This document shows, piece after piece, positions 19,118 through 43,665 of a DNA stretch of 64,000 bases. Location: positions 156,868-220,867 of the IMG/VR virus record IMGVR_UViG_3300032322_001765; one strand, written 5' to 3'. The translations under genes and the position numbers were made by a program. The first letter of the stretch is position 1. Each line of letters opens with the position of its first letter. The notes below the pieces were generated by a model that saw only the letters and a program-made list of their open reading frames with translations, did not search any database and was not told the origin of the DNA.

Positions 19118-20186
19118 TTTCTATCCACTGATCATTGGGTTGACTTATATCTACATTTTTAAATTCACCGCATACTCTGGCACAGGTAATTAATTTTTCT
19201 TCATTCCATTTTTTGTGCCAAATATTTTGCCAAATTTCAGAATCAATCACATTTTTTATTCCGTTTAGTGCATTAAGTTTTTCTACACCACCAAAATCTT
19301 CAATTAGTTTAGTGTATTGATTTTTTATATCTTCGCTTACATTATGATTGATATATTCAGGATCATAGTATGTATAGGGTATGGAACTTACCCAACAACA
19401 AGGAAGTATGGTTTTGTATGCGTCAATGTAGATTTCTTTAAGATTTAAAACATGGCAGTTAATTTTTGCCTCAGCTATAAGTTGTTTATAAGAATTAATT
19501 ACCTCTTTTGGCATAAACTTAATAGTAGTTTCAGTTGGGGGTTCAATTGTATGTGTATAGTTTCCTTCTTTATCTACAACATCGTATTTTGGTTCTACTA
19601 AAAAGCGTGAACTATTTTTTACAACAAATTTTGAGAAACCTAAACTTTTGGCTACTACCCTACATTCTTCTGTTTGATGCTCATTGTGTTTAAATTTTAT
19701 AAATGTCCATTCGGCGATTCCCCCTGCATCAATAAAAGCTTTTGCATTTTTTATTACAGTATTGTAATTAGTGCCTATCCTATATAATGAATGCGTATCA
19801 ACTAATCCGTCAAGTGCGAAATGAACACAGTGATCTACAGGAAGTGCCTTAGCTAAATCTATCCACCATGACGGCTTTCTAGCTCCGCCATTGGTGTGTA
19901 TGGCAATTCGTACATTTGGATTCACATGTTTGATGTACACACACATTTCTATTAGGTCATCATGCAGCATAGGATCACCAAAATTGCCGCAAAAATATAT
20001 ACATCGGACTAAGTTTAAAATTTCAGGAGAGATGATCTTTTTAAACTCAATTAGTGTCCACTGAGTTAATTTTAAATATGGATTAGGCAACCCACCGTGA
20101 TGATTTCTGGCACACATGGGGCACCTTGCCTGACAATTATTAGTTAGCTCTATGTGAATAGATTTTAATTCATTAAATTTAAACAT
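19101..20186 (-). CDS. Radical SAM protein; paralog of 17137..18186
   Basis: CQARCPMC, GNFGDP, TNG; CHV...PCC...CARVC. Confidence 0.9.
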   Translation of the reverse strand: MFKFNELKSIHIELTNNCQARCPMCARNHHGGLPNPYLKLTQWTLIEFKKIISPEILNLVRCIYFCGNFGDPMLHDDLIEMCVYIKHVNPNVRIAIHTNGGARKPSWWIDLAKALPVDHCVHFALDGLVDTHSLYRIGTNYNTVIKNAKAFIDAGGIAEWTFIKFKHNEHQTEECRVVAKSLGFSKFVVKNSSRFLVEPKYDVVDKEGNYTHTIEPPTETTIKFMPKEVINSYKQLIAEAKINCHVLNLKEIYIDAYKTILPCCWVSSIPYTYYDPEYINHNVSEDIKNQYTKLIEDFGGVEKLNALNGIKNVIDSEIWQNIWHKKWNEEKLITCARVCGEFKNVDISQPNDQWIETNSLT

Positions 20187-24147: not shown

Positions 24148-24223
24148 TGGGGATTCGCCAAGTTGGTAAGGCACCGGATTTTGATTCCGGCATTCGGTGG
24201 TTCGAGTCCATCATCCCCAGCCA
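24148..24223 (+). tRNA. tRNA-Gln(TTG)
   Basis: Cloverleaf, CCGGA-TTTTGAT-TCCGG, encoded CCA. Confidence 0.95.
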
Positions 24224-24225
24224 TT

Positions 24226-24302
24226 GCCCCAATAACTCAGTGGACTAGAGTACTGTGCTACGAACGCAGGAGTCGGAGGTTCGAATCCTTCTTGGGGTAC
24301 CA
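24226..24302 (+). tRNA. tRNA-Arg(ACG)
   Basis: Loop CTACGAA, GGTTCGAATCC, CCA. Confidence 0.95.
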
Positions 24303-24308
24303 TTCTTG

Positions 24309-24337
24309 TTGACTAAATACGTTTGCTTGTTTAATAT
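24309..24337 (+). promoter_or_regulatory. Sigma70-type promoter for pqqA
   Basis: TTGACT-17nt-TAATAT. Confidence 0.6.
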
Positions 24338-24362
24338 GAGCGTTCTTATACAGGAGGTAAAC

Positions 24363-24434
24363 ATGTGGACTAAACCTACAGCACAGGATATGCGTTTTGG
24401 TTTTGAAATCACTATGTATATTGCAAATCGCTAA
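24363..24434 (+). CDS. pqqA: PQQ precursor peptide PqqA (23 aa)
   Basis: MWTKPTAQDMRFGFEITMYIANR with ExxxY core; GGAGGT SD; below the ORF-track length cutoff. Confidence 0.95.
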   Translation: MWTKPTAQDMRFGFEITMYIANR

Positions 24435-24452
24435 TATACAACATTGATGGGC

Positions 24453-24479
24453 AAAAAGGTAGCTATGCTACCTTTTTTT
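24453..24479 (+). terminator. Intrinsic terminator after pqqA
   Basis: AAAAAGGTAGC-TAT-GCTACCTTTTT(TT). Confidence 0.85.
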
Positions 24480-24481
24480 AC

Positions 24482-24557
24482 GGTAGAGTAGCATAGCGGC
24501 TAATGCGCCACCTTCATACGGTGTTTATCGTCAGTTCGAGTCTGACCTCTACTACCA
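24482..24557 (+). tRNA. tRNA with CAT anticodon (Met, possibly Ile2)
   Basis: Loop TTCATAC, T arm GTCAG-TTCGAGT-CTGAC, CCA. Confidence 0.85.
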
Positions 24558-24571
24558 ATAAAGGAAATATT

Positions 24572-24724
24572 ATGCCAATGTATGAAACTACTGTTAGAAC
24601 GCCGAGCGGCGAAGAAAAGAAAAGAATTTATGCGGATACACCGCAAGAGGCTAAAAAACTTTTTGAACAATTGTATGGTGGGCCTAGAGCAGTTCCATAT
24701 ATACCAAAAATAGTACCAAGTTAG
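24572..24724 (+). CDS. Hypothetical protein (50 aa)
   Basis: AAGGA SD, MPMYETTVRTPSGEEKKR; ORF-track start 24503 lies inside a tRNA. Confidence 0.7.
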   Translation: MPMYETTVRTPSGEEKKRIYADTPQEAKKLFEQLYGGPRAVPYIPKIVPS

Positions 24725-24797
24725 GGGGATTAGTTAAATGGGATAACAACGGCTTTGCAAGCCGTGATTAACAGTTCGATTCTGTTATCCTCCACCA
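24724..24797 (+). tRNA. tRNA-Ala(TGC)
   Basis: ACGGC-TTTGCAA-GCCGT; G3.U70 acceptor pair; CCA. Confidence 0.9.
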
Positions 24798-24808
24798 AAA
24801 CATTCAAT

Positions 24809-24885
24809 GGTGATGGTAGCTCAGTTGGTAGAGTCCCGGATTGTGATTCCGGTCGTCGTGGGTTCGAGCCCCATCCTTCACCCCA
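24809..24885 (+). tRNA. tRNA-His(GTG)
   Basis: G-1/C73, loop TTGTGAT, CCA. Confidence 0.95.
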
Positions 24886-24888
24886 AAT

Positions 24889-24966
24889 ACCCTGATGGCG
24901 AAATTGGTAGACGCACCAGTTTAAGGTACTGGATTGTTGAGAGTTCGAGTCTCTCTCAGGGCACCA
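24889..24966 (+). tRNA. Atypical tRNA-Leu(AAG)
   Basis: CCAGT-TTAAGGT-ACTGG; Leu-type D loop; A1.C72 mismatch; short variable region; CCA. Confidence 0.7.
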
Positions 24967-24968
24967 AT

Positions 24969-25044
24969 GCCGTTCAAGCTAACCAAGTGGAAGCGTCTGT
25001 CTGAAGAACAGAATGGCCTGGAGCGTTACCAGGGGTCGGCACCA
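24969..25044 (+). tRNA. tRNA-Phe(GAA) with non-canonical T loop
   Basis: TCTGT-CTGAAGA-ACAGA; T arm CCTGG-AGCGTTA-CCAGG; CCA. Confidence 0.75.
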
Positions 25045-25048
25045 ATTT

Positions 25049-25077
25049 TTGACAAATATTAAATTATTTGTTATACT
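25049..25077 (+). promoter_or_regulatory. Sigma70-type promoter
   Basis: TTGACA-17nt-TATACT. Confidence 0.8.
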
Positions 25078-25081
25078 TGAT

Positions 25082-25156
25082 GAGTCCTTAGTCTAATGGA
25101 TAAGATACTGCATTCCGATTGCATTGATGCAGGTTCGATTCCTGCAGGACTTACCA
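25082..25156 (+). tRNA. tRNA-Arg(CCG)
   Basis: TGCA-TTCCGAT-TGCA, GGTTCGATTCC, CCA. Confidence 0.85.
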
Positions 25157-25188
25157 AAAGTAAATACTATTTTATATAGGAGATTAAA

Positions 25189-25749
25189 ATGTCTGTCTTA
25201 GCTTTGGATATCACAGGAATCCCTAGACAATGGGTTTCAAACGATATTGCAATCACTTACCATGCAAAAGAGATGGTAGCATGGAGTATTGGTGAAATTG
25301 TTGCACGTTATCGTGGTGGCATTCAAAATAATGGCAAAATGAGTTATCTTGAAACTCCTAGTATTATTGCCATTAAAGGACATGGTTTTGATCCTAGCAA
25401 ACATGGCAAAGTTGCACTTACTAATAAAACATTGTTTGGGCGTGACCGTCATGTATGTGCATACTGCGGCGGACATTTTTCGAATTCAAACAACTTAAGT
25501 CGTGACCATATTTTACCTAAAAGCAGAGGTGGTGCAAACAATTGGATGAATGTGGTTACTGCATGTACTCCATGCAATAACAAGAAAGACAACAAAACAT
25601 TGAAAGAGGCACGAATGGAATTGCTTTATGTTCCCTATGAGCCAAATTTCTTTGAAGCAATGATTTTGCAAAATAGAAATATTCTCGCTGATCAAATGGA
25701 ATACTTAATGACAGGTGTACCAAAACATAGCAGAATTTTGTTATCATAA
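25189..25749 (+). CDS. HNH endonuclease
   Basis: RDRHVCAYCG, DHILPKSRGG, NVVTACTPCN. Confidence 0.9.
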   Translation: MSVLALDITGIPRQWVSNDIAITYHAKEMVAWSIGEIVARYRGGIQNNGKMSYLETPSIIAIKGHGFDPSKHGKVALTNKTLFGRDRHVCAYCGGHFSNSNNLSRDHILPKSRGGANNWMNVVTACTPCNNKKDNKTLKEARMELLYVPYEPNFFEAMILQNRNILADQMEYLMTGVPKHSRILLS

Positions 25750-25757
25750 TAAAAACA

Positions 25758-25786
25758 TTGACATAAAATGTTTTGTGTGATATGAT
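25758..25786 (+). promoter_or_regulatory. Sigma70-type promoter
   Basis: TTGACA-17nt-TATGAT. Confidence 0.8.
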
Positions 25787-25805
25787 TGCGTTTAAATAGT
25801 TTTAT

Positions 25806-25880
25806 GCTGGCGTGGCTCAACGGTAGAGCAACGGATTTGTAATCCGTAGGTTGAGGGTTCGATTCCTTTCGCCAGCACCA
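25806..25880 (+). tRNA. tRNA-Thr(TGT)
   Basis: ACGGA-TTTGTAA-TCCGT, CCA. Confidence 0.95.
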
Positions 25881-25886
25881 TTTTAT

Positions 25887-25962
25887 TGTCTAGTAGCTCA
25901 GTCGGTAGAGCAGGTGACTGTTAATCACCCTGTCGTAGGTTCGATCCCTACCTAGACAGCCA
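25887..25962 (+). tRNA. tRNA-Asn(GTT)
   Basis: GGTGA-CTGTTAA-TCACC, CCA. Confidence 0.95.
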
Positions 25963-25986
25963 AACTTCTTGTATTATAGGTATATT

Positions 25987-26181
25987 ATGTTAGTTACTGA
26001 AGCACAAGGTTACAAACTTTTCTGTGAAACACAAAAAATTGATTTCCCGCCGGACACCTATTATGTTCGTATTTTTACCAAATATGAATTTGCTAAGAAC
26101 TCTGATGCGGAGCAAACTAAGATTGAACTTTTTCTAACTAAAAGTGAATTAGACAATCTTAGACAAATGCTTACTGTCTAA
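25987..26181 (+). CDS. Hypothetical protein
   Basis: MLVTEAQGYKLFC; AGGT SD-like site. Confidence 0.6.
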   Translation: MLVTEAQGYKLFCETQKIDFPPDTYYVRIFTKYEFAKNSDAEQTKIELFLTKSELDNLRQMLTV

Positions 26182-26188
26182 TTAATTT

Positions 26189-26263
26189 CTGGCGTTCGTA
26201 TAAGGGATAATACTACAGACTTCTAATCTGTAAATCCAGGTTCGAGTCCTGGACGCCGGACCA
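26189..26263 (+). tRNA. tRNA-Arg(TCT)
   Basis: ACAGA-CTTCTAA-TCTGT, CCA. Confidence 0.9.
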
Positions 26264-26292
26264 AATTATCAAACTAGCAACAAAAATAATTG

Positions 26293-26321
26293 TTGACGAT
26301 AAATCCTATTTGATGTATAAT
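26293..26321 (+). promoter_or_regulatory. Sigma70-type promoter
   Basis: TTGACG-17nt-TATAAT. Confidence 0.8.
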
Positions 26322-26366
26322 TCTTTTTATCGTAGTTAATATCTTTAACAATTTAATAACATTTAG

Positions 26367-26442
26367 GCACCCATCGTCTAGAGGCCTAGGACATTGCCCT
26401 TTCAAGGCAGTAACACGGGTTCGAATCCCGTTGGGTGTACCA
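26367..26442 (+). tRNA. tRNA-Glu(TTC)
   Basis: Loop CTTTCAA, GGTTCGAATCC, CCA. Confidence 0.95.
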
Positions 26443-26502
26443 GTTAATGGTATAACTAACTGTGATACAAGCACAATATGCTTGGTAGATTATACCATAC
26501 TT

Positions 26503-26579
26503 GCCCACTTAGCTCATTCGGTTAGAGCATCGTCTTGATAAGGCGGGGGTGCTTGGTTCGATTCCAAGAGTGGGCACCA
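26503..26579 (+). tRNA. tRNA-Ile(GAT)
   Basis: Loop TTGATAA, CCA. Confidence 0.95.
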
Positions 26580-26660
26580 TATTGAAGCACATTATTAGTG
26601 ACGCTGGGAAGGACAAGATTCAGCGGTAAATAAATCCTTCATTAGTGTGTTTCAATATGG
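26577..26660 (+). ncRNA. Stem-enclosed RNA containing an H-type pseudoknot
   Basis: CCATATTGAAGCACATTA / TAGTGTGTTTCAATATGG stem; inner CGCTG/CAGCG plus GAAGGA/TCCTTC. Confidence 0.45.
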
Positions 26661-26689
26661 TTGACAATAAATCAGTTTGCTGTTAAACT
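26661..26689 (+). promoter_or_regulatory. Sigma70-type promoter for unknown ncRNA
   Basis: TTGACA-17nt-TAAACT. Confidence 0.75.
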
Positions 26690-26696
26690 AGCGGCA

Positions 26697-26895
26697 AATA
26701 AAGATTCCGGTTACTACTTTCCTGAAAGTAGCGTGTGGCGACGATAATTGACCCGGTGGCAGCAAACCGTTAGCGAGGTAACTCCTCAGGCACTGCTAGG
26801 CAGAATCCCAACTGCACACAGACACGAGAATAAACGGGATGGACAGGGTAACAACTCTGCTAAGGGGCGATGCCTGGAAAACACGTAGCCTTAGC
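26697..26895 (+). ncRNA. Unknown GC-richer structured RNA, copy 1
   Basis: No credible ORF; own promoter; shares GATGGACAGGGTAACAACTC and AAGGGGC...GTAGCCTT hairpin with copy 2; ends approximate. Confidence 0.5.
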
Positions 26896-27022
26896 AATAT
26901 TAGTTTTGCAGTTTGTAAGCACAGAAGCCGGCGCGAGGCATTATGTAACCAAAGCAATAAACAGTAATCACGTGTAAAGCTGTTGAGCGAGGCATATAGT
27001 ATAAACTGCAAAACTAATATTG
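26895..27022. repeat. Perfect 20-bp inverted repeat enclosing 88 nt
   Basis: CAATATTAGTTTTGCAGTTT (26895-26914) / AAACTGCAAAACTAATATTG (27003-27022). Confidence 0.9.
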
Positions 27023-27098
27023 GCTTCATAGTTCAGTTGGTTAGAACGCCGCCCTGTCACGGCGGAGGTCAGGGGTTCGAGTCCCCTTGAGGTCGCCA
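27022..27098 (+). tRNA. tRNA-Asp(GTC)
   Basis: CCGCC-CTGTCAC-GGCGG, CCA. Confidence 0.95.
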
Positions 27099-27180
27099 AA
27101 CATAGGGTAAACTTCTACTTGCACTTAATTTGAACTTAAAGTAAAATATAGGTTCTTTAGTTAAGTCATTGGAGAACAGA

Positions 27181-27384
27181 ATGAATTTGAAATTGAAAGC
27201 AGCATTGTATACCTTTCTATATGCATTAACAGGATTAGGTGTAGGATTTGTAGTATCACAACTGCCTACTTGGACAGTAGTAACACTTGTGTGTATTTTT
27301 GGAATTTGTCTAGCATATATTCTTATACATACAGGACTAAAATACGATGAAGCAGTAAAAGAAATAAGTAAGAAGTACGAATAA
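27181..27384 (+). CDS. Small membrane protein
   Basis: GGAGA SD; two hydrophobic segments. Confidence 0.65.
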   Translation: MNLKLKAALYTFLYALTGLGVGFVVSQLPTWTVVTLVCIFGICLAYILIHTGLKYDEAVKEISKKYE

Positions 27385-27392
27385 TGTAGTTA

Positions 27393-27483
27393 GGAGCGTT
27401 GGCCGAGTGGTCGAAGGCAGTGGTTTGCTAAACCATCGTACATCAAAAATGTACCATTAGTTCGAATCTAATACGCTCCGCCA
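27393..27483 (+). tRNA. tRNA-Ser(GCT)
   Basis: Loop TTGCTAA, long variable arm, CCA. Confidence 0.95.
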
Positions 27484-27510
27484 GTTTTCATATTTTATTT
27501 AGGAAAGAAA

Positions 27511-27690
27511 ATGAAATATCTTAATTTTGTATTACCCGTTATAATCACACTACTTTCAATAATTGGAATTATTGCTAGTTATGGTGCAGGTAACGATTCT
27601 GCACTTAGTGCATATGTTGTAGCATTATCAGGTTGGATGGTAATCGCAACGGATGAAGTTATTAAATTTATTGATAGTCGAAGAAAATAA
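27511..27690 (+). CDS. Small membrane protein (59 aa)
   Basis: AGGA SD; MKYLNFVLPVIITLLSIIGIIA...; two hydrophobic segments. Confidence 0.6.
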   Translation: MKYLNFVLPVIITLLSIIGIIASYGAGNDSALSAYVVALSGWMVIATDEVIKFIDSRRK

Positions 27691-27696
27691 ATTTAT

Positions 27697-27774
27697 GCAA
27701 CGGTGGCAGAGAGGCCCAATGCAAGAGTCTGCAAAACTCTAAAGCCGTCAGTTCGAATCTGACCCGTTGCTCCA
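27697..27774 (+). tRNA. tRNA-Cys(GCA)
   Basis: AGAGT-CTGCAAA-ACTCT, U73, CCA. Confidence 0.95.
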
Positions 27775-27977
27775 AGTATCCCGCAGGCCCTTCTGCGCTA
27801 TGAAAGGGGGTATATTGGCTTCACCATAACGCCAGGGCTCTTACGTTGATAGCCTCAAAGCCCGCTTGACATGGGTGATAGAAAAAACGTAGGTGGGTAT
27901 CACACCTTGCCAGAAGTAAATGTGATGGACAGGGTAACAACTCAGTAAGGGGCTTATGGGAATAAGTAGCCTTACAC
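27775..27977 (+). ncRNA. Unknown structured RNA, copy 2
   Basis: Identical 20-mer at 27924-27943 and covarying terminal hairpin; ends approximate. Confidence 0.5.
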
Positions 27978-28029
27978 TTTATACTATAGGAGATCCTGTT
28001 ATGGATAGTGACAAGAGTGACAAGATAAT

Positions 28030-28105
28030 GCGGGCATAGCTCAGTCGGTAGAGCAGTAGACTTTTAATCTATTGGTCGTGGGTTCGAATCCCCCTGCCCG
28101 TACCA
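28030..28105 (+). tRNA. tRNA-Lys(TTT)
   Basis: Loop CTTTTAA, CCA. Confidence 0.95.
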
Positions 28106-28183
28106 TATAAAAACACATTCGCTTATATTTTAACGGCTTGCAAGGCACGGGCGTATAAGAGTATTGAGTGTGTTTCTATATGG
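28103..28183 (+). ncRNA. Stem-enclosed RNA (third member of the AGTRTGTTTC stem family)
   Basis: CCATATAAAAACACATTC / GAGTGTGTTTCTATATGG. Confidence 0.45.
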
Positions 28184-28189
28184 TTTATT

Positions 28190-28274
28190 GGGGATGCGGC
28201 TAAGTTAGAGAGTGGCGGCGGACTGTAAATCCGTTCTTTCGGGTGAGTAGGTGCGAATCCTTCCATCCCCACCA
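28190..28274 (+). tRNA. tRNA-Tyr(GTA)
   Basis: Loop CTGTAAA, long variable arm, T loop TGCGAAT, CCA. Confidence 0.9.
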
Positions 28275-28280
28275 ATTAAT

Positions 28281-28354
28281 TCCGGTGTAGTATAATGGCA
28301 GTGCGACGGTCTCCAAAACCGTTAGTGGGAGTTCGATTCTCTCCACCGGAGCCA
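28281..28354 (+). tRNA. tRNA-Trp(CCA)
   Basis: ACGGT-CTCCAAA-ACCGT, CCA. Confidence 0.95.
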
Positions 28355-28355
28355 G

Positions 28356-28646
28356 TTATTTAGTGAATCGTCTAATATGTGTAGATATAGGAGTATTATA
28401 TTGTTCTGTACCGCGATCACCGCCTACTGTTAAACGTAAGTTTACATCAACGGTTTTTGCGTAATAGTTTACATAATTGGCAATTTTACTACTTGTTGTT
28501 CTAATTAGACAAATACCGGCATTATTACAAACTATGTAGGTAGTTATTCCGAATTCGTCTTTGTCTATGAATAGCATAACATATTTATTAATATTTGGGC
28601 AACTAATAGTTGCATTATTAATTTGTTTGATGTATAATCTATACAT
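28356..28646 (-). CDS. Hypothetical protein
   Basis: 96-aa ORF filling the gap between two tRNAs on the opposite strand. Confidence 0.45.
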   Translation of the reverse strand: MYRLYIKQINNATISCPNINKYVMLFIDKDEFGITTYIVCNNAGICLIRTTSSKIANYVNYYAKTVDVNLRLTVGGDRGTEQYNTPISTHIRRFTK

Positions 28647-28657
28647 AAGTTAGAAAT

Positions 28658-28734
28658 GCCTCTGTAGCTCAATCGGTCAGAGCAGCGGACTCATAATCCG
28701 TTGGTTAGGGGTTCGAGTCCCTTCGGAGGCACCA
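28658..28734 (+). tRNA. tRNA with CAT anticodon, probably Ile2 (lysidine)
   Basis: GCGGA-CTCATAA-TCCGT, paired 1:72, CCA. Confidence 0.85.
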
Positions 28735-28742
28735 GGTATTAT

Positions 28743-28816
28743 GCGGGATTAGTTTAATGGTAAAACGAAAGCCTTCCAAGCTCTAGTTATCAGTTCGATT
28801 CTGATATCCCGCTCCA
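28743..28816 (+). tRNA. tRNA-Gly(TCC)
   Basis: Loop CTTCCAA, U73, CCA. Confidence 0.95.
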
Positions 28817-28825
28817 AGTTAGAAT

Positions 28826-28909
28826 GCCCGGGTGGTGAAATGGTAGACACAAAGGACTTAAAATCCTTCGCCGCAAGGCGTGCCGGTTCGAGTCCGGCTT
28901 CGGGTACCA
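28826..28909 (+). tRNA. tRNA-Leu(TAA)
   Basis: AAGGA-CTTAAAA-TCCTT, long variable arm, CCA. Confidence 0.95.
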
Positions 28910-28917
28910 AGTAACAT

Positions 28918-29000
28918 GCGCATATGGCGAAATTGGTAGACGCGCCAGATTTAGGTTCTGGTCTCAACGGGTGGGGGTTCGAGTCCCTCTATGCGCACCA
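28918..29000 (+). tRNA. tRNA-Leu(TAG)
   Basis: CCAGA-TTTAGGT-TCTGG, CCA. Confidence 0.95.
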
Positions 29001-29033
29001 CTGTTCTCTTTTATAAAGATAAATAATTGTACT

Positions 29034-29207
29034 ATGGCACAATTAAAAATCTTCATTAACGACAAACTATACAAAACAGTACCATTAGATACTGAAAAAT
29101 ATGAGCCTTCTTGGTATTGGCCTCAAATTAAGGCTGATAAAGAAGCCGGTTTACTAAATTCTTTTAACATTGAAGAATCAATGAAAGTAGAATTTAGAAA
29201 AATATAA
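29034..29207 (+). CDS. Hypothetical protein
   Basis: MAQLKIFINDK; TAAATA 8 nt upstream; ORF-track start overlaps a tRNA. Confidence 0.6.
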   Translation: MAQLKIFINDKLYKTVPLDTEKYEPSWYWPQIKADKEAGLLNSFNIEESMKVEFRKI

Positions 29208-29285
29208 ACCATAATAGTTTGTATACTTTCAATATTGCAATGATATGCTCACGCATATCAAAAAAGCAAGCCTATTTTTTTAGCT

Positions 29286-29293
29286 TATAAATA
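29286..29293 (+). promoter_or_regulatory. T4-type late promoter
   Basis: Perfect TATAAATA upstream of the fMet-like tRNA. Confidence 0.7.
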
Positions 29294-29311
29294 AGTCGTA
29301 GGACATTAAGA

Positions 29312-29384
29312 CGCGGGTTAGGGAAGAGGTCATCCCGTTAGGCTCATAACCTGAAGATCGTTGGTTCAAATCCAGCACCCGCAT
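29312..29384 (+). tRNA. Initiator-like tRNA-fMet(CAT), atypical, no encoded CCA
   Basis: CGCGGGT/ACCCGCA with C1.A72; TTAGG-CTCATAA-CCTGA; flanked by 10-bp extension stem. Confidence 0.8.
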
Positions 29385-29402
29385 CTTAGTGTCTTACAAT
29401 AA

Positions 29403-29481
29403 CCGGGTGTAGCTTAGTCTGGCTTAAAGCGCCTGCTTTGGGAGCAGGAGATCGTGAGTTCGAATCCCACTTCCCGGACCA
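29403..29481 (+). tRNA. tRNA-Pro(TGG)
   Basis: CCTGC-TTTGGGA-GCAGG, CCA. Confidence 0.95.
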
Positions 29482-29500
29482 ATTCTTTTTAAGGTGATAT

Positions 29501-29638
29501 ATGGCTAAGCAAGTTGGAGTAAAAGAACGTAAGAAGGTAGTCAAATTAACTTGTCAGGGAGGAAGTAAACCCAAAACAAGTACTATGAATAAGGATTTAA
29601 AAAGAAGTTACAAGAAGTATAGAGGACAAGGTAAATAG
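29501..29638 (+). CDS. Small basic protein (45 aa)
   Basis: AAGGTG SD; MAKQVGVKERKK...TMNKDLKRSYKKYRGQGK; C-terminal YRGQG is a pattern I recall from T4-like phage small proteins. Confidence 0.7.
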   Translation: MAKQVGVKERKKVVKLTCQGGSKPKTSTMNKDLKRSYKKYRGQGK

Positions 29639-29712
29639 CATCGTTAGTTCAGCGGTAGAATCCCTGCCTTACAAGCAGGTTGTCGTTGGTTCGAATCCAG
29701 CACGATGCACCA
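29638..29712 (+). tRNA. tRNA-Val(TAC)
   Basis: CCTGC-CTTACAA-GCAGG, CCA. Confidence 0.95.
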
Positions 29713-29718
29713 AGTATT

Positions 29719-29793
29719 GCGGGTGTAATTCAGGGGTAGAATGTTTGCTTGCCAAGCAAAATGTCAGGAGTTCGAATCTCCTCACCCGCTCCA
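29719..29793 (+). tRNA. tRNA-Gly(GCC)
   Basis: TTTGC-TTGCCAA-GCAAA, CCA. Confidence 0.95.
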
Positions 29794-29809
29794 ATTTTAT
29801 ATAATTTTT

Positions 29810-31050
29810 ATGGCACATCAACAACAATTTGATTTTGTACAAAGAGTAAAGAATCGCTATCCAATAAATTTTTTTCAGAAAAAAGTTTTAGAAATTGGTA
29901 GCTTAAACATTAATGGCACAATAAGAGATTTTTTCAACTATTGTGATTATTTGGGAGTTGATGTAGGACAAGGTCCATGCGTCGATATAGTTTGTGAAGG
30001 TCAAAATGTAGATCATCCCGACAACACTTATGACACAGTTGCAAGTTGTGAATGTTTTGAACACAACCCTCATTGGGTAGAAACTTTTCAAAATATGTAT
30101 CGTATGACTAAGCCGGGTGGTTTAGTTTTTATGAGTTGTGCAACTACAGGTAGACCTGAACATGGTACAACACGTACTAGTCCTAGTGATAGTCCGTTAA
30201 CAATTGGTATAGGTTGGGATTACTATAAAAATTTAACTGAACAAGATTTTAGAGATAACTTTAACATTGATGAAATGTTCAGTGAATATAAATTTGAAGT
30301 TGGTACATCACATCCTGATTTATATTTTTATGGTGTTAAAAAAACAAGTGATGTAATTGATTTTAGAAAATACTTTACTGAAAAGTATTACGACAGTAAT
30401 TGGTTAAAAACTGCAAAAGAAACTTATGACAATAACGATCCTTACCCGCATCTTGTCATAGATGATTTTTTACCAGTTGACGTAATGGAAAAAGTTTTAA
30501 ATTCTTTCCCTCAACCCGGCGACTTAGATTGGTGGGAATTCAAGAATGATAACGAAATAAAATTAGGCAGTAGAAAAGAAATTCAATTACCGCAAGTAAC
30601 AAGAAATGTATGTGCAGAATTAAATTCTGGCTATGTGTTAGATTGGTTAGAGTATTTAACCAGTGTACCTGGGCTTATTGCTGATACAAGATTGTTTGGT
30701 GGTGGGTTGCATCAAATTGTGCGTGGTGGAAAATTAAACATCCATGTAGATTTTAATATTGAACCACATACAAAATTACGTAGGCGACTTAATGTTCTAA
30801 TCTATCTTAACAAAGATTGGAAAGAAGAATACGAAGGTTATTTAGAATTGTGGGACAAAACAAAAACACAATGTGTAAAAAAGATAGCGCCCGTTTTTAA
30901 TCGTTGTGTAATTTTTAATACTAATGATACTTCATGGCATGGGCATCCTACTCCATTAAATACGCCCGAACATATTACAAGAAAAAGTTTAGCCATGTAT
31001 TATTACTCTGTCGATACAGAGAACGTAAAAGTTCATTCAACCATTTATTA

Positions 31051-31051
<1 letters not shown>
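29810..31051 (+). CDS. Methyltransferase fused to Fe(II)/2OG oxygenase
   Basis: N: VLEIGSLNING...CECFEH; C: GGGLHQI...IHVDFN...WHGHP; start moved to MAHQQQ because the track start lies in tRNA-Gly. Confidence 0.8.
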
Positions 31052-31140
<89 letters not shown>

Positions 31141-32979: not shown

Positions 32980-33046
32980 AGTAGGTGAAGCAATTTTTTA
33001 TAGTTTAGTAGCAGTTTTTATTGTGGCATTTTTACTTACTATTTAA
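32972..33046 (+). CDS. Small hydrophobic peptide (24 aa)
   Basis: MYKVGEAIFYSLVAVFIVAFLLTI; AAGGA SD-like site. Confidence 0.4.
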   Translation: MYKVGEAIFYSLVAVFIVAFLLTI

Positions 33047-33049
33047 TAT

Positions 33050-33358
33050 TGTTGTATGAAACAATCCGAAACAGGTTCTGGACGGCGGTTCGATTCCGCC
33101 CATCTCCACCAAATGCAATCTTGGGATGATTATTTTCCGCCTTTGAATTTGTGGAACTATAGTATCAGTTGGCAATGGAAGATTTCATTTGATGGGGATG
33201 ATCAGGTCTCGACAGGGTCAAGAGTACGAGAGTGGACAACACGGTAGGCGATGACCGTAAATCAAGCAAAACTATAACTGCAAACGCAGCTAATGATGAG
33301 GTATACGCTCTAGCAGCGTGATCTCCGGGGCAACTATGCCTTGTTACCAAAAATAGTT
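33050..33358 (+). ncRNA. ssrA: Circularly permuted (two-piece) tmRNA; tag ANAANDEVYALAA
   Basis: 3' end GGTTCGATTCC...CATCTCCACCA (ends 33111) precedes 5' end GGGGATG (33194); G3.U70; tag ORF 33280-33321; outer ends approximate. Confidence 0.9.
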
Positions 33359-33359
33359 T

Positions 33360-33384
33360 AAAAGGCTACTTCGGTAGCCTTTTT
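33360..33384 (+). terminator. Intrinsic terminator
   Basis: AAAAGGCTAC-TTCG-GTAGCCTTTTT. Confidence 0.9.
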
Positions 33385-33403
33385 CCATTATAAATATACT
33401 ATT

Positions 33404-33988
33404 ATGATAGTTTATATACACGGCGCCAGCGCAACTAAAGATAGCTTTTCTTACATTAGACAATTTGTTAGAGATAATATAGAGTTACCTGATATCGCAT
33501 TAGAGTATAACAGTAGTGATGGGTTTGATTATAATATAGGCACTATGTTTGGTAGATTGGATGATGCTGAAAAACTATTTTTCGTTTCGCATAGTTTAGG
33601 TGGCATATACGCATTGCATTTAGCAAATCATTATAAAGATAGAACAATCGGTGGCGTTTCACTAAGTACTCCATACGGTGGATGTAGACAAGCAGATTTT
33701 GCTAGATATTTTTTACCTTTTAATAAGTTAATGAAAGATATTGGAACAATGTCAGATCCAATGATAGAGGCAAAGCGTTTACCTGCTCCTAAAAATTGGA
33801 CTAATGTTGTCACAACAAGAGGAGATAGTCCTTGGATACAAGAACCAAATGATGGAGTGGTTACTATTGAAAGCATGAAGTATCGTGCAGATTTTGAATT
33901 GGTTGAGGCAAATATTAACCATTATGAAGTTGTATTAAATCCAAACATTGTTGAACTTATTTTAGATAGAATTAAAAAAGCAATTTAA
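33404..33988 (+). CDS. Alpha/beta hydrolase
   Basis: YIHG, SHSLGG nucleophile elbow, NDGVV, distal H. Confidence 0.8.
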   Translation: MIVYIHGASATKDSFSYIRQFVRDNIELPDIALEYNSSDGFDYNIGTMFGRLDDAEKLFFVSHSLGGIYALHLANHYKDRTIGGVSLSTPYGGCRQADFARYFLPFNKLMKDIGTMSDPMIEAKRLPAPKNWTNVVTTRGDSPWIQEPNDGVVTIESMKYRADFELVEANINHYEVVLNPNIVELILDRIKKAI

Positions 33989-34030: not shown

Positions 34031-34083
34031 ATTCTAACTTCTAAATATTTTTGTACACATGTACATTTTATCGGAGACAGAGT

Positions 34084-35106
34084 ATGAAAAAAATATTTGC
34101 ATTATTGGCGTTTGTGTCAACATTTGCATCAGCAGCAGAATTCACCGGAGCAGGAGCAACATTCCCGTTCCCAATCTATGCTAAGTGGGCTGAAGCATAC
34201 AAAGCACAAACTGGCATTGGTCTAAATTATCAATCAATTGGTAGTGGCGGTGGTATTCGTCAAATCAAAGCAAAGACGGTTGACTTTGGCGCAAGTGATA
34301 TGCCATTGAAAAAAGAAGAACTTGACAAAGAAGGTCTTGTACAATTTCCAGCAATCATCGGTGGTGTTGTACCAGTATTCAACCTAGACGGTATTGATGC
34401 TGGTAAATTAAAACTTACTCCAGATGTGATTGCTAATATTCATTTAGGTAAAATTAACAAATGGAATGACAAAGCAATTGCTGAATTAAATCCAGGAGTT
34501 GCTCTTCCTGCTATGAACATTACTGTAGTTCATCGTGCAGACGGTTCAGGTACTACATTTATCTGGACAAACTTTTTAGGCAAAGCAAATGCTGAATTTC
34601 AAAAAACAGTAGGCGAAGGCACAGCAGTTAAATGGCCAGTTGGTGTAGGCGGTAAAGGCAACGAAGGTGTAGCAGCACAAGTGCAAAGAATCAAAGGTGC
34701 ATTTGGTTATGTTGAGTATGCTTATGCTAAAAGAAACAAGATTCCTTATGCAGCGTTGAAAAATCGTGATGGTAACTTTGTACTACCAGATGATACTACA
34801 TTCAAAGCAGCCGCAGCTAATGCTGATTGGAACAATGCGCCAGGGATGTATTTGTTACTCACATGGCAGACAGGTAAAGATGCATGGCCAGCAACAGGTG
34901 CAAGTTTCATTCTAATGCACAAGCAACAGGCAGATACATTAACGGGTCGTGCAGTTCTCAAGTTCTTTGACTGGTCATACAAGAATGGTGGCCAAATGTC
35001 AACTGAGTTAGAGTATGTTCACATGCCAGCTGATGTAATTAAATTAGTTCAGGAAAATTGGAAGAAGGATTTCCGTGGTCCTGATGGTAACCCAATTTGG
35101 AAATAA
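34084..35106 (+). CDS. pstS: Phosphate ABC transporter substrate-binding protein PstS
   Basis: Signal peptide; GAGATFP, YQSIGSGGG, FGASD, RADGSGTT, GKGNEGV; GGAGA SD. Confidence 0.95.
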   Translation: MKKIFALLAFVSTFASAAEFTGAGATFPFPIYAKWAEAYKAQTGIGLNYQSIGSGGGIRQIKAKTVDFGASDMPLKKEELDKEGLVQFPAIIGGVVPVFNLDGIDAGKLKLTPDVIANIHLGKINKWNDKAIAELNPGVALPAMNITVVHRADGSGTTFIWTNFLGKANAEFQKTVGEGTAVKWPVGVGGKGNEGVAAQVQRIKGAFGYVEYAYAKRNKIPYAALKNRDGNFVLPDDTTFKAAAANADWNNAPGMYLLLTWQTGKDAWPATGASFILMHKQQADTLTGRAVLKFFDWSYKNGGQMSTELEYVHMPADVIKLVQENWKKDFRGPDGNPIWK

Positions 35107-35110
35107 ACAC

Positions 35111-35139
35111 TTGACAACCGTTAACACTGATGATACAAT
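35111..35139 (+). promoter_or_regulatory. Sigma70-type promoter overlapping an 11-bp inverted repeat
   Basis: TTGACA-17nt-TACAAT; AACCGTTAACA/TGTTAACGGTT plus T tract. Confidence 0.7.
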
Positions 35140-35166
35140 GTTAACGGTTTTTTATAAGGACACACA

Positions 35167-36573
35167 ATGAAAACATTAGGTAAATTAACTTTGGCTATTT
35201 CTTTAGCCTTCTCAGTTCCAGCATATGCTGATGAATATTTGAGTACATTAAATATTTTGCGAGACAAAGGTATCATTACAAAACAAGAGTATGATACTAA
35301 AGTACGTGATTATGAAGAAAAAGCAGAAAACAAAAAATTTGCAGAGCAACGAATCGACAAAGATGTTAGCGATTCAGTCAAATTTAGACAAGCAAGAGCA
35401 AACGACGGATCAGTTACAGAAAACGGATTTGGACTTAAATCCAAAGATGGAAACACGACTGCCCAATTTACAGGTCGATTACATATGGACTATCGTCAGT
35501 ACGACCCCAATTATGGTACAGGTCAAACCACGGATTCGTATCAGAACCTAGCAGAAGTTCGTCGTGCTAGATTTGGCGTACGTGGTCAATTTCAAAAAGA
35601 TTTCAAGTATCAACTACTTGCAAACTTTGGTAATGACGTAGGTGCTTCTGCTACTTCCAGTACCGCAGATGAGATGTGGGTTAACTATGCAGCCAATCCT
35701 GAAATGCAATTTCAGTTTGGTTTATTCAAAATGCCATTCAGCTTAGAGCAATTAACAAGTTCTAATAATATTGATTTTATGGAGCGTAGTTTAATTGGTA
35801 ACACTGATGGTGAGTTCATTCCTGCAAAAGAAACTGGATTCATGGTTCATGGTATACCTAAACCAGGTCTATTGTATCAAGTAGCATTAAGCCGTGGTCG
35901 TGCAAACAAAGATGCAACTAACGATGGTTTTGACTATATTGGTCGTGTAGTAACAAACGTTGCTGAACTACAAGGTAGCAAAGCATATGTATTACATTTA
36001 GGCGCTGCATACAGTATGGGTGATATCAAAGGTGGTGTTACACCAGCTAGTGGTAGAACAGAGGCTCGCACACAGTCAGCATGGTTTACAGGTCCTGCAT
36101 TATCTGGTACCACGACAAGAACTCGCCAAGGATTAGAAGCAGCATTTGCTTACAATGGTTTAAAGTTACAAGGCGAACAGTTTAATTTCAAGTATGATCC
36201 TACAACAGGTTCCGATCAAGAAATTAAAGGTTACTACGTACAAGCATTGTATAACTTAACAGGCGAAAGTCACAATTATAAAGACGGTATCTTTAACTGG
36301 ATTAAACCAAACAATCCAACAGATAAAGGTGGTCGCGGTGCATGGCAAGTTGGTGTGCGTATGAGTGAGTTTGATGCAAGTGGTATCACTGTTGTAACAG
36401 GCAAATCTAATCGTGCTACTGCCATGACATACGGAATTACTTGGTTTGCAACTGACAATTTACGCTTCATGCTCAACTATGTTGACACAAAGTTTGATTC
36501 GTTAGTAGGAAGTTCAGGTAGCCGTGTAAATGGTGACAGAGCAGTTATGTTTAGAAGCCAATTAAGTTTCTAA
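35167..36573 (+). CDS. Phosphate-selective porin, OprO/OprP family
   Basis: Signal peptide; GRLHMD, RRARFGVRG, GLFKMPFSLEQLTSS...FMERS, RYSE-like RMSEFD, C-terminal F. Confidence 0.85.
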   Translation: MKTLGKLTLAISLAFSVPAYADEYLSTLNILRDKGIITKQEYDTKVRDYEEKAENKKFAEQRIDKDVSDSVKFRQARANDGSVTENGFGLKSKDGNTTAQFTGRLHMDYRQYDPNYGTGQTTDSYQNLAEVRRARFGVRGQFQKDFKYQLLANFGNDVGASATSSTADEMWVNYAANPEMQFQFGLFKMPFSLEQLTSSNNIDFMERSLIGNTDGEFIPAKETGFMVHGIPKPGLLYQVALSRGRANKDATNDGFDYIGRVVTNVAELQGSKAYVLHLGAAYSMGDIKGGVTPASGRTEARTQSAWFTGPALSGTTTRTRQGLEAAFAYNGLKLQGEQFNFKYDPTTGSDQEIKGYYVQALYNLTGESHNYKDGIFNWIKPNNPTDKGGRGAWQVGVRMSEFDASGITVVTGKSNRATAMTYGITWFATDNLRFMLNYVDTKFDSLVGSSGSRVNGDRAVMFRSQLSF

Positions 36574-42462: not shown

Positions 42463-43665
42463 TTAAATAAACCATGTAACTATAGAATATCTAGTTCCCT
42501 TAGTTACAGTTAACACCTCATGAGGATACATATAAGTTGATGGGAACATTAAAACTGATCCTTTTTTAAGTTTATACGTTAGTTCTTTACCAAAAAAAGA
42601 AAAATCGCCTCCCTCATAATCATCATTTAAAGCTATCGAACAAGAAACGGATCTTGGTTGTTCTGTAAAACTATCACAATGAATGCTGTAAAAATTTCCT
42701 TCACTGTATTTTAAAAAGTTGTAACCTGTATCACTGTTAATGTGAACTGTGGGATGTTTTTTCCTATATTTTTGCATTGCATTTATCATACATTCATGTA
42801 GTTGCGTATCTAGACTTTGTGCATTTTTGTTCAGTTCAAAAACTACCGGATCACTAATTAATAGAGTAAAAACATTTCGTACTTCAGGATTTTGTATTGC
42901 GGCAGCACCAACTGCTGCCAATTGTAATTTTTCGTCATTTCCAAATTCTTTAATAATTCTATCACATAATGAATGTGGGATAATGTTTTCATATACTTCA
43001 ATAAAATCTGTTATTTTACTTTGAGAAGTTATGACATAGGAACTTTCTTCTTGAACGGAATTTTCTTCTTGATTAGAAATTTGATTCGTTATATTATAAG
43101 TTGTTATTGATTCTTGTTTTTTTGATTTATCACTACTTTTATCAAAATATGCGTAAGCTCTTTCGCCTCTACTTCTTACATAATGTAAAAAAACTTGTAC
43201 ATATCTTTCACCGTCATACATTTCTCTCCAATGTTCAGCTTCGCATCCAAGGTAAATCATAGCGTCACCTGATTTTAAGTTGAGTTTAATGGTCTCACCT
43301 TTTGGATTTTTAATAAAAATGGGCCATTCTTTATCACCATCTAAGTGAACTGTTAAACTTATTTCACATGCATCTCTATCTTTGTGTATATGAAGTTCTG
43401 CTCCTTTTTTGTAAACTCTAGAATATGTGTATGTTGGCAAAACGTTTTCACCAATAAATTCACCTACTTCTGGTGTAGAATTACATAATAATTCTAAAAA
43501 ATCTATGTAATTATAAGAGGAACTGGAAGAAGGTATTTGAGGATCGCCTCCTATATTATTTTCTTCACAAAAATGTTCAAAATTATTTGCTAGTATTTTA
43601 GCCCTTTCTTTAGAAATAAAATTAGGTATATACACATAATTATTTTCAGTTAATAATGGGTTCAT
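42463..43665 (-). CDS. Protein with two Fe(II)/2OG oxygenase domains
   Basis: N: LHIHKDRDACEIS...EHWR; C: IHCD...YEGGD...PHEV...GTRYS. Confidence 0.85.
   Translation of the reverse strand: MNPLLTENNYVYIPNFISKERAKILANNFEHFCEENNIGGDPQIPSSSSSYNYIDFLELLCNSTPEVGEFIGENVLPTYTYSRVYKKGAELHIHKDRDACEISLTVHLDGDKEWPIFIKNPKGETIKLNLKSGDAMIYLGCEAEHWREMYDGERYVQVFLHYVRSRGERAYAYFDKSSDKSKKQESITTYNITNQISNQEENSVQEESSYVITSQSKITDFIEVYENIIPHSLCDRIIKEFGNDEKLQLAAVGAAAIQNPEVRNVFTLLISDPVVFELNKNAQSLDTQLHECMINAMQKYRKKHPTVHINSDTGYNFLKYSEGNFYSIHCDSFTEQPRSVSCSIALNDDYEGGDFSFFGKELTYKLKKGSVLMFPSTYMYPHEVLTVTKGTRYSIVTWFI

What the first reader, a model, noticed from the sequence alone, without database searches (positions are those of the whole stretch)
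33050..33384. Phage-encoded circularly permuted tmRNA with a lengthened tag
Seen: the T arm and CCA end (to 33111) come before the 5' GGGGATG (33194). They are joined by an 82-nt intervening segment closed by CAAATG/CATTTG and AATCTT/AAGATT. G3.U70 is intact, the tag is ANAANDEVYALAA, and a terminator follows. Established: two-piece tmRNAs occur in Alphaproteobacteria, some Betaproteobacteria and marine cyanobacteria, and one-piece gene finders can miss them. Inference: the phage supplies its own ribosome rescue; the extra ANA in the tag could alter SspB/ClpX handling.
Basis: partly seen in the sequence, partly recalled or inferred. Interest (0 to 1): 0.65.

Follow-up and report, generated by a model that had tools for sequence, protein, structure and literature searches.

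The report
Jumbo phage two-piece tmRNA gene
An uncultivated jumbo phage carries an intact, circularly permuted (two-piece) tmRNA gene for rescuing stalled ribosomes; the call is sound, but such phage genes are already documented, so this is a well-supported new member rather than a new kind of thing.

Summary
ARAGORN calls a permuted tmRNA with tag ANAANDEVYALAA. Rfam RF04321 scores 137 bits (cut-off 47) and RF01850 beta_tmRNA scores 137.2 bits (cut-off 84).

The record is a 220.9-kb viral contig, about 61% complete. It has a T4-type capsid gene and 27 tRNAs, so it is a jumbo myovirus. An identical 5.3-kb stretch occurs on a second IMG/VR contig (different sample prefix).

In 31 viral relatives, compensatory changes support the P2 helix, the tRNA-like domain, the T arm, the acceptor stem and its extension into the 82-nt intervening segment. 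The tag frame shows synonymous turnover with a conserved peptide, so it is translated.

No SmpB was found in this record, nor in four cultured phage genomes that carry a permuted tmRNA. The phage supplies only the RNA half of the system.

The extra residues sit N-terminal to an intact AANDEVYALAA. Altered SspB/ClpX handling is therefore not supported. The extension recurs in two further contigs.

Phage two-piece tmRNAs were already reported (53 of 133 unique phage tmRNAs, Buchholz 2022). This one is a new member of a known kind.

The parts
33050..33111 (+). Acceptor piece. It holds the P2 3'-side strand UGUUGU (33050-33055), the tRNA-like-domain strand GGUUCUG (33074-33080), the T arm (33084-33100), the acceptor 3' strand (33101-33107), discriminator A33108 and an encoded CCA (33109-33111).
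   Evidence: RF04321 alignment; sequence; RNAalifold pair counts with compensatory changes; T stem paired in 133 of 133 related loci.
33112..33193 (+). 82-nt intervening segment, presumably excised. Its two ends (33110-33122 and 33179-33191) pair and extend the acceptor stem coaxially.
   Evidence: Folds. In 31 relatives the extension helix is kept through compensatory changes, for example alignment column pair 74/144 reads UA 11, CG 9, UG 8. The internal part is not conserved.
33194..33358 (+). Coding piece. It holds the acceptor 5' strand GGGGAUG (33194-33200), the D-loop analogue, the tRNA-like-domain strand CAGGGUC (33213-33219), the P2 strand ACAACA (33236-33241), the PK1-region hairpin (33242-33257), the tag frame and the post-tag pseudoknot.
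   Evidence: RF01850 and RF04321 alignments; covariation.
33280..33321 (+). Tag reading frame: resume codon GCA 33280, peptide ANAANDEVYALAA, stop TGA 33319-33321. The upstream context UAACU places U at -5 and A at -4.
   Evidence: ARAGORN. The same UAACU|GCA context is present in relatives L062 and L071. U85/A86 are conserved and A86 is the dominant frame determinant (PMC2481249). Synonymous turnover across 88 unique tag frames.
33327..33358 (+). Post-tag H-type pseudoknot. S1 is GGGGC 33327-33331 with GCCUU 33338-33342. S2 is AACUAU 33332-33337 with AUAGUU 33353-33358. The loop is GUUACCAAAA.
   Evidence: S2 is modelled by RF01850, and S1 appears in the minimum-energy fold. A perfect 6-bp S2 flanking NCCUY occurs in 67 of 104 unique viral sequences with 34 different strands; shuffles give a mean of 6.5.
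33360..33386 (+). Intrinsic terminator: AAAAGGCUAC, UUCG loop, GUAGCCUUUU, then UCC.
24148..31140 (+). Array of 27 tRNA genes on the same strand, 1.9 kb upstream. It covers 19 amino acids and includes tRNA-Ala(UGC). These are the only tRNAs in the 220-kb record.

Best explanation
This is a functional, circularly permuted ssrA gene of the beta-type lineage, carried by an uncultivated jumbo myovirus next to its tRNA array.

Proposed mechanism (all steps inferred):
1. One precursor is transcribed, running at least from 33050 to the terminator at about 33386.
2. The precursor folds so that the acceptor stem is extended by a helix that closes the 82-nt intervening segment.
3. Host tRNA-processing enzymes cut 5' of G33194 (RNase P type) and trim back to the encoded CCA at 33111.
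4. This leaves an acceptor piece of about 62 nt and a coding piece of about 165-190 nt. They are held together by the acceptor stem, the 7-bp tRNA-like-domain helix and the 6-bp P2 helix.
5. Host AlaRS charges the RNA through G3.U70.
6. Host SmpB and EF-Tu deliver it to ribosomes stalled on broken mRNAs.
7. Translation resumes at GCA 33280, and the nascent chain receives (A)ANAANDEVYALAA, a ClpXP-type degron.

The likely benefit is keeping ribosomes free during a long infection in which host mRNA and DNA are being destroyed.

What is shown here is gene integrity, structure conservation, peptide-level selection on the tag, and carriage by a phage.
For: - Three independent detectors agree on the call.
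- All identity elements are intact: G3.U70, A73, an encoded CCA, the T loop, and U-5/A-4 before the resume codon (PMC2481249).
- In 133 related loci found with a pattern that left these positions free, acceptor pairs 5-7 are all complementary in 122 loci, using several pair types. The T stem is paired in all 133.
- RNAalifold on 31 viral relatives predicts 40 pairs, 26 of them with compensatory changes. These cover P2, the tRNA-like-domain helix, the T arm, the acceptor stem and the precursor extension.
- The S2 stem of the post-tag pseudoknot covaries.
- The tag is under peptide-level selection. In 88 unique frames the last residue is Ala in 85, using all four Ala codons, and residue -3 is Leu in 72, using six codons.
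- Against its sister L062, the window's tag frame has 4 synonymous and 2 non-synonymous codon differences.
- The element is phage-borne and not an assembly chimera. The record has a gp23 capsid gene, and an identical 5.3 kb with the same flanking genes occurs on a second IMG/VR contig (different sample prefix).
- Related cultured phages carry the same kind of gene: XacN1 (123 bits), Menderavirus phages (119 bits) and Phosso (113 bits).
- None of these cultured phages has SmpB.
Against:
- No sigma-70-like promoter was found just upstream on the + strand. The transcription start and the 5' end of the acceptor piece are therefore unknown.
- The host is unknown, so compatibility with its SmpB and proteases is assumed.
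- The record is only about 61% complete, so absence of SmpB from the whole phage is not proven.
- The second helix of the RF04321 model has two non-canonical pairs in the window.
Confidence: 0.8

Rival explanations
1. The RNA works in trans-translation, but its selected role is proteome remodelling. It would tag and destroy host nascent proteins early in infection to recycle amino acids, rather than chiefly rescuing ribosomes.
For: This alternative was proposed for phage Melnitz (PMC9004378). The tag carries a complete ClpX/SspB-type degron (PMC8512704).
Against: Nothing in the sequence separates this role from plain rescue. tmRNA enters only stalled ribosomes, so tagging follows stalling in either case.
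Confidence: 0.1
2. It is a decoy that titrates host SmpB or AlaRS and so inhibits host trans-translation, as suggested for the tRNA-like-domain-only RNA of mycobacteriophage DS6A.
For: The DS6A precedent and the inhibition caused by tRNA-like-domain-only molecules (PMC4131195, PMC11915505). No SmpB gene is carried by the phage.
Against: A decoy does not need a reading frame. Here the resume context, the frame, the LAA end and the stop codon are all intact, and they are conserved at the peptide level with synonymous turnover across the family.
Confidence: 0.06
3. It is passenger DNA: a host tmRNA gene recently captured, an assembly chimera, or an attachment-site remnant with no function in the phage.
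For: tmRNA genes are common integration sites, and prophages can carry fragments of them (PMC9004378, PMC12595487). The local G+C is higher (0.42-0.45) than in most of the window (0.31-0.40 in 4-kb bins).
Against: - The gene is complete, not a fragment.
- It recurs identically with the same neighbours on a second contig with a different sample prefix.
- Its nearest relatives are all on viral contigs.
- The same architecture was found in only 12 places among 185,579 bacterial species genomes.
- No integrase was seen among the flanking genes.
- Higher G+C is normal for structured RNA genes and also holds for the tRNA array.
Confidence: 0.04

Closest known systems
Betaproteobacterial two-piece tmRNA (Rfam RF01850; Sharkady and Williams 2004 lineage)
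   Same: - The gene order is the same: acceptor piece, intervening segment, coding piece, terminator.
- The P2 and tRNA-like-domain helices match.
- The AGGCGA-containing loop of the PK1-region hairpin is shared.
- The ANDE..ALAA tag core is shared.
- The post-tag pseudoknot loop GCCUUGUUACCAAA is the same in the window and in locus L144; L145 has a close variant.
   Different: - The window scores 137 bits, against 214-331 bits for 14 of the 15 genomes over the cut-off in the best-scoring bacterial family (the 15th, on a contig end, scores 160).
- The intervening segment is 82 nt, against 24-42 nt in the five bacterial loci measured.
- The CCA is fully encoded here, whereas two canonical bacterial genes examined read ACCU or ACCC.
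- The tag is three codons longer.
- In the tree the window sits in a group made up only of viral sequences, while the canonical bacterial genes form their own clade with 98% support.
Two-piece tmRNAs of cultured phages: OM43 phage Melnitz and pelagimyophages (PMC9004378), Stenotrophomonas Menderavirus phages (Marzo, Yut2, IME-SM1), Xanthomonas jumbo phage XacN1
   Same: - All are phage-borne permuted ssrA genes lying beside tRNA genes.
- No SmpB was found in the cultured phages tested (XacN1, Phosso, Marzo, Yut2).
- XacN1 belongs to the same capsid-related jumbo group as the window's phage.
- Menderavirus tmRNAs are also beta-type, at 93-95 bits.
- XacN1's tag also begins ANAN.
   Different: - Melnitz's tmRNA is alpha-type and is linked to a glutamine riboswitch. 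No riboswitch was found in this window.
- Sequence identity to Menderavirus is only 76%, and only over the acceptor piece.
- XacN1 has an intervening segment of about 114 nt and the acceptor stem GGGCGUG.
One-piece phage tmRNAs (mycobacteriophage Bxz1 group, Bacillus phage G) and the tRNA-like-domain-only RNA of DS6A (PMC4131195)
   Same: All are phage-encoded ssrA genes in large phages that carry many tRNAs.
   Different: Those genes are in standard gene order, or lack a tag frame. This one is permuted and has a full tag.

Membership tests
tmRNA (SsrA), permuted / two-piece form (RF04321) | Covariance-model score above the curated cut-off | tested here: met
   137 bits against a cut-off of 47, covering the full model 1-213.
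tmRNA (SsrA), permuted / two-piece form (RF04321) | tRNA-Ala-like domain: a 7-bp acceptor stem with G3.U70, discriminator A, a CCA end, a T arm with a GUUCGAUUC-type loop, and no anticodon arm | tested here: met
   Read directly from the sequence and from the model alignment. The stems covary in relatives.
tmRNA (SsrA), permuted / two-piece form (RF04321) | Circular permutation: the 3' acceptor half and CCA lie upstream of the 5' half, separated by an intervening segment | tested here: met
   The CCA ends at 33111, GGGGAUG starts at 33194, and the gap is 82 nt.
tmRNA (SsrA), permuted / two-piece form (RF04321) | Tag reading frame with a resume codon set by upstream U-5/A-4, a hydrophobic C-terminus and a stop codon | tested here: met
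   UAACU|GCA, then ...YALAA, then TGA. Peptide-level conservation with synonymous change across the family. The upstream determinants are described in PMC2481249.
tmRNA (SsrA), permuted / two-piece form (RF04321) | Maturation of the precursor into two base-paired RNAs | not testable with these tools
Only the conserved precursor helix around the cut sites could be shown.
tmRNA (SsrA), permuted / two-piece form (RF04321) | Dedicated partner SmpB encoded in the same genome | tested here: not met
   No PF01668 match in the 220-kb record, which is about 61% complete. None in XacN1, Phosso, Marzo, Yut2 or the 192-kb viral contig behind L047. This is expected for a phage gene that uses host SmpB and does not argue against the identity of the RNA.
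tmRNA (SsrA), permuted / two-piece form (RF04321) | Alanylation and trans-translation activity | not testable with these tools
   This needs biochemistry or genetics.
Beta-type permuted tmRNA (RF01850) | Score above the cut-off across the whole model, including the lineage-specific 3' hairpins | tested here: met
   137.2 bits against a cut-off of 84, model positions 1-331. The post-tag hairpin and the terminator both align.
Beta-type permuted tmRNA (RF01850) | Descent within the bacterial betaproteobacterial clade | tested here: inconclusive
   In an unrooted quick tree the window falls in a group of 52 sequences, all viral, with support of 88. The canonical bacterial genes form a separate clade with 98% support. 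The alignment is short, the sampling is biased and there is no outgroup.

The most novel reading that the evidence does not exclude
The beta-like permuted tmRNA may be primarily a phage gene family rather than a bacterial one.

Observations consistent with this:
- In at least two of the bacterial genomes (a Massilia isolate and a Spiribacter MAG) it is an extra copy beside a standard tmRNA. In Massilia it lies next to phage-type replication genes.
- It occurs in phages whose recorded hosts are Xanthomonas and Stenotrophomonas, bacteria outside the groups reported to have two-piece tmRNA (PMC11915505).
- The canonical bacterial beta clade nests among viral sequences in the tree.

If the root lies among the phage sequences, the betaproteobacterial two-piece tmRNA would have been acquired from phages and would have replaced the native one-piece gene.
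Probability: 0.15. Interest if true: 0.65.

Novelty: new member of a known kind. Interest (0 to 1): 0.3.

Why it matters
- It adds a clean, fully dissected example of a two-piece tmRNA in a jumbo phage with an almost complete tRNA set. This fits the view that large phages carry parts of the translation apparatus to stay independent of a failing host.
- Annotation gaps: the homologous genes in the deposited genomes of XacN1 and Phosso carry no annotation.
- Permuted tmRNA genes are common in viromes.
- The conserved helix that extends the acceptor stem into the intervening segment gives a concrete substrate model for how the precursor is cut.
- None of this changes current understanding of trans-translation.

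Tried and rejected
They were sampled through the genome search instead.
- Near and distant DNA searches of the phage collection found no close relative of this genome.
- No sigma-70-like promoter was found directly upstream. The promoter segment of the RF01850 model aligns poorly.
- The intervening segment alone shows no energy signal (z = -0.39).
- Alternative resume codons were considered: GCA 33286, giving AANDEVYALAA, and GCU 33289, giving ANDEVYALAA. MAFFT aligned the window's second GCA with the resume codon of relatives. I rejected both alternatives because only the first GCA has U-5/A-4, and the same UAACU context is shared with L062 and L071. All three options are in the same frame, so the C-terminal degron is unchanged.
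- SspB and ClpP genes were searched for in the phage record and not found.
- I did not build my own covariance model, because a model of this length would exceed the calibration limit. I did not use the count of structure pairs, to avoid typing a 414-character structure string. RNAalifold counts and my own scripts were used instead.
- Host identity was not resolved.

Full report
**1. The observation**

- T arm: 33084-33100.
- Acceptor 3' strand CAUCUCC: 33101-33107, followed by A33108 and CCA at 33109-33111.
- 82 nt later, GGGGAUG at 33194-33200, so G3 pairs with U70.
- Reading frame: GCA 33280 to GCG 33318 (ANAANDEVYALAA), then TGA.
- A 10-bp hairpin with a UUCG loop and a U tail at 33360-33386.

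ARAGORN reports a permuted tmRNA at 33019-33412 with that tag. Rfam gives RF01850 beta_tmRNA 137.2 bits (cut-off 84) and RF04321 tmRNA_permuted 137 bits (cut-off 47), both over their full models. The minimum-energy fold of 33050-33386 reproduces the T arm and the acceptor stem. It also reproduces the CAAAUG/CAUUUG and AAUCUU/AAGAUU pairings that close the intervening segment.

**2. The genome**

The window is the last 64 kb of a 220,867-bp IMG/VR virus record that CheckV puts at about 61% complete.
- The record encodes a T4-type major capsid protein (PF07068, 330 bits).
- The closest cultured relatives of that protein are jumbo myoviruses: Vibrio phage 2.275.O and Sinorhizobium phage Phosso at 72% identity, the PA5oct group at 69%, and the 121Q/Rak2-like phages at 67%.
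- The window also holds a 1,830-aa tail-fibre gene and many auxiliary genes: ferrochelatase, 2OG-Fe(II) oxygenases, radical-SAM proteins, a CobS-like ATPase, PstS and a phosphate porin.
- All 27 tRNA genes of the record lie in one same-strand array at 24148-31140, 1.9 kb upstream of the tmRNA.
- A second IMG/VR contig with a different sample prefix (L012) is identical over 5.3 kb, including the flanking proteins. The locus is therefore not an assembly artefact.

**3. Evidence that the gene is under selection as a tmRNA**

I scanned IMG/VR with a pattern that fixes only the T loop, CUCCACCA, GGGG and the D-loop analogue, and allows 55-85 nt between the two halves. ARAGORN calls nearly all of these permuted tmRNAs, with ANDE..ALAA-like tags.

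*Stems*
- At positions the pattern left free, acceptor pairs 5-7 are all complementary in 122 of 133 loci, with A-U, G-C and C-G alternatives. The T stem is paired in all 133.
- RNAalifold on 31 viral relatives of the window predicts 40 pairs, 26 of them with compensatory double changes. The helices are:
  - the 6-bp P2 helix, 33050-33055 with 33236-33241; alignment column pair 4/204 reads C-G 17 and U-A 14;
  - the 7-bp tRNA-like-domain helix, 33074-33080 with 33213-33219;
  - the T arm;
  - the acceptor stem;
  - a helix that continues the acceptor stem into the intervening segment, 33110-33122 with 33179-33191.
The interior of the segment is not conserved, and the segment alone has no energy signal (z = -0.39).

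*Post-tag pseudoknot*
- Downstream of the tag there is an H-type pseudoknot: S1 33327-33331 with 33338-33342, and S2 33332-33337 with 33353-33358.
- The family shares it. A perfect 6-bp S2 occurs in 67 of 104 unique sequences, with 34 different strand sequences. Shuffled controls give a mean of 6.5.

*Tag frame*
- Among 88 unique tag frames, the final residue is Ala in 85, using all four Ala codons.
- The penultimate residue is Ala in 84.
- Residue -3 is Leu in 72, using six codons.
- Peptide conservation with synonymous turnover means the frame is translated.

**4. The lengthened tag**

- The nearest relative, L062 (82% identity), encodes ANAANDEVFSLAA, and L029 encodes ANASNDEVYALAA. The next relative, L071, has the ordinary ANDELFAIAA behind the same upstream UAACU.
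- The window, L062 and L029 thus share a three-codon insertion after Ala-Asn.
- Differences between them are mostly synonymous:
  - against L062, 4 synonymous and 2 non-synonymous codon differences;
  - against L029, 6 synonymous and 1 non-synonymous.
- The extension is therefore translated and maintained.
- Counting the alanine carried by the RNA itself, the added peptide reads AAN-AAN-DEVYALAA, a repeat of the first three residues.
- Its last eleven residues, AANDEVYALAA, match the mature E. coli tag AANDENYALAA at ten of eleven positions.
- In E. coli the AANDENY part binds SspB and the ALAA part binds ClpX. Reporter fusions show that these motifs work whatever precedes them (PMC8512704).
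- The extension is therefore best read as a short spacer. The idea that it alters SspB/ClpX handling has no support, though it was not tested.
- The resume codon is most likely the first GCA. Only that codon has U at -5 and A at -4, the highly conserved U85/A86 positions; A86 is the dominant frame determinant (PMC2481249). The two alternative starts are in the same frame.

**5. What the phage does not supply**

- No SmpB domain was found in the 220 kb held.
- None was found in four cultured phage records that carry a permuted tmRNA (XacN1, Phosso, Marzo, Yut2; XacN1 384,670 bp was searched in full), nor in a related 192-kb viral contig.
- No SspB or ClpP gene was found in the window's record either.
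- The phage thus contributes only the RNA. Charging, delivery, processing and proteolysis must come from the host.

**6. Relation to known tmRNAs**

- RF04321 was built by merging the alpha, beta and cyanobacterial permuted models. The tmRNA database lists 79 bacteriophage sequences (PMC11915505).
- Buchholz et al. found ssrA in 402 of 18,146 phage genomes, giving 133 unique genes. ARAGORN called 53 of these two-piece, mostly from aquatic phages. The authors also discussed possible functions (PMC9004378).
- Earlier lists held only one-piece mycobacteriophage and Bacillus phage G genes (PMC4131195).
- Among cultured phages, Stenotrophomonas Menderavirus genomes carry a beta-type permuted gene, which some records annotate.
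- The jumbo phage XacN1 (two copies at opposite ends of its record, one scanned: tag ANANTFDYALAA) and Phosso also carry one, without annotation.
- The kind is therefore known, and this is a new member.

**7. A wider pattern, offered as a hypothesis**

- The long-intervening pattern matched only 12 places in one genome for each of 185,579 bacterial species.
- Five of those 12 place with three further bacterial genomes of one family in a single clade, four of them Advenella genomes. In the one Advenella tested, the permuted gene seems to be the only tmRNA.
- In Massilia eurypsychrophila and in a Spiribacter MAG it is an extra copy beside a standard tmRNA scoring 211 and 218 bits. In Massilia it lies beside phage-type primase, helicase and ParB genes.
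- In a sample of 151 genomes from the order that includes Massilia, only 4 reach the RF01850 cut-off.
- Canonical bacterial beta genes mostly score 214-331 bits. The five measured have intervening segments of 24-42 nt, and the two examined do not encode the final A of the CCA.
- In a quick maximum-likelihood tree of 144 sequences, the window falls in a group of 52 sequences that are all viral, with support of 88. The canonical bacterial genes form one clade with 98% support, nested among viral and mobile-element copies.
- This is compatible with a largely phage-borne gene family that has exchanged with bacteria.
- However, the tree is unrooted, the alignment is short, and the sampling was set by my patterns. 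I give the phage-origin reading a low probability.

**8. Verdict**

The gene call and its anatomy are right. The functional reading is right in kind, but the phage depends on host SmpB. The suggestion about the tag is not supported. Phage two-piece tmRNAs are already described, so interest is modest.

Noticed in passing
window 24148-31140: All 27 tRNA genes of the 220-kb record sit in one + strand array. They cover 19 amino acids, and no tRNA-Phe was found.
   Followed up: partly
window 34051-36573: A pstS-like phosphate-binding gene (34051-35106) is followed by a phosphate-selective porin O/P gene (35167-36573; Pfam 179 bits, no PHROG match). An outer-membrane porin carried by a phage looks like an unusual auxiliary gene, and it points to a Gram-negative host.
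   Followed up: no
window 29741-31051: A single ORF fuses a SAM-dependent methyltransferase to a 2OG-Fe(II) oxygenase. Its start overlaps tRNA-Gly (29719-29793), and its last base coincides with the first base of tRNA-Ser (31051).
   Followed up: no
window 33389-33396 (also 16456, 29286): TATAAATA, the T4 late-promoter consensus, occurs only 3 times against about 14 expected, always on the + strand. One copy lies between the tmRNA terminator and the ATG at 33404, and one lies inside the tRNA array before tRNA-Met.
   Followed up: partly
window 9675-20186 and 42463-43665: The first region is a cluster that includes at least three radical-SAM-domain ORFs. The second is a ferrochelatase fused to a 2OG-Fe(II) oxygenase. 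A CobS-like ATPase and a large phrog_1314 protein lie at 51708-54508.
   Followed up: no
L186/L188 (AP018399.1 37231-37530 and 356026-356325); L187 (PV764938.1 349596-350198): Xanthomonas jumbo phage XacN1 (two copies at opposite ends of its record; the one scanned has tag ANANTFDYALAA) and Sinorhizobium phage Phosso (intervening segment of about 400 nt) carry permuted tmRNA genes. Neither is annotated in the deposited record.
   Followed up: partly
L186 317-475: ARAGORN calls two adjacent tRNAs with a CUA anticodon (amber-suppressor type, labelled Pyl) about 1 kb upstream of XacN1's tmRNA.
   Followed up: no
L124 (NZ_PDOC01000028.1, Massilia eurypsychrophila): This bacterium has a standard tmRNA and also a second, permuted tmRNA with a 78-nt intervening segment. 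The second copy lies next to phage-like primase, helicase and ParB genes, so it is probably on a mobile element.
   Followed up: partly
L047 (IMGVR_UViG_3300047548_000772, 192 kb): This is a related large viral contig with six tRNAs, a permuted tmRNA (tag ANDEVYALAA) and a homologue (69% identity) of the window's phosphoesterase gene near the tmRNA. That suggests partial synteny of this region among jumbo phages.
   Followed up: partly
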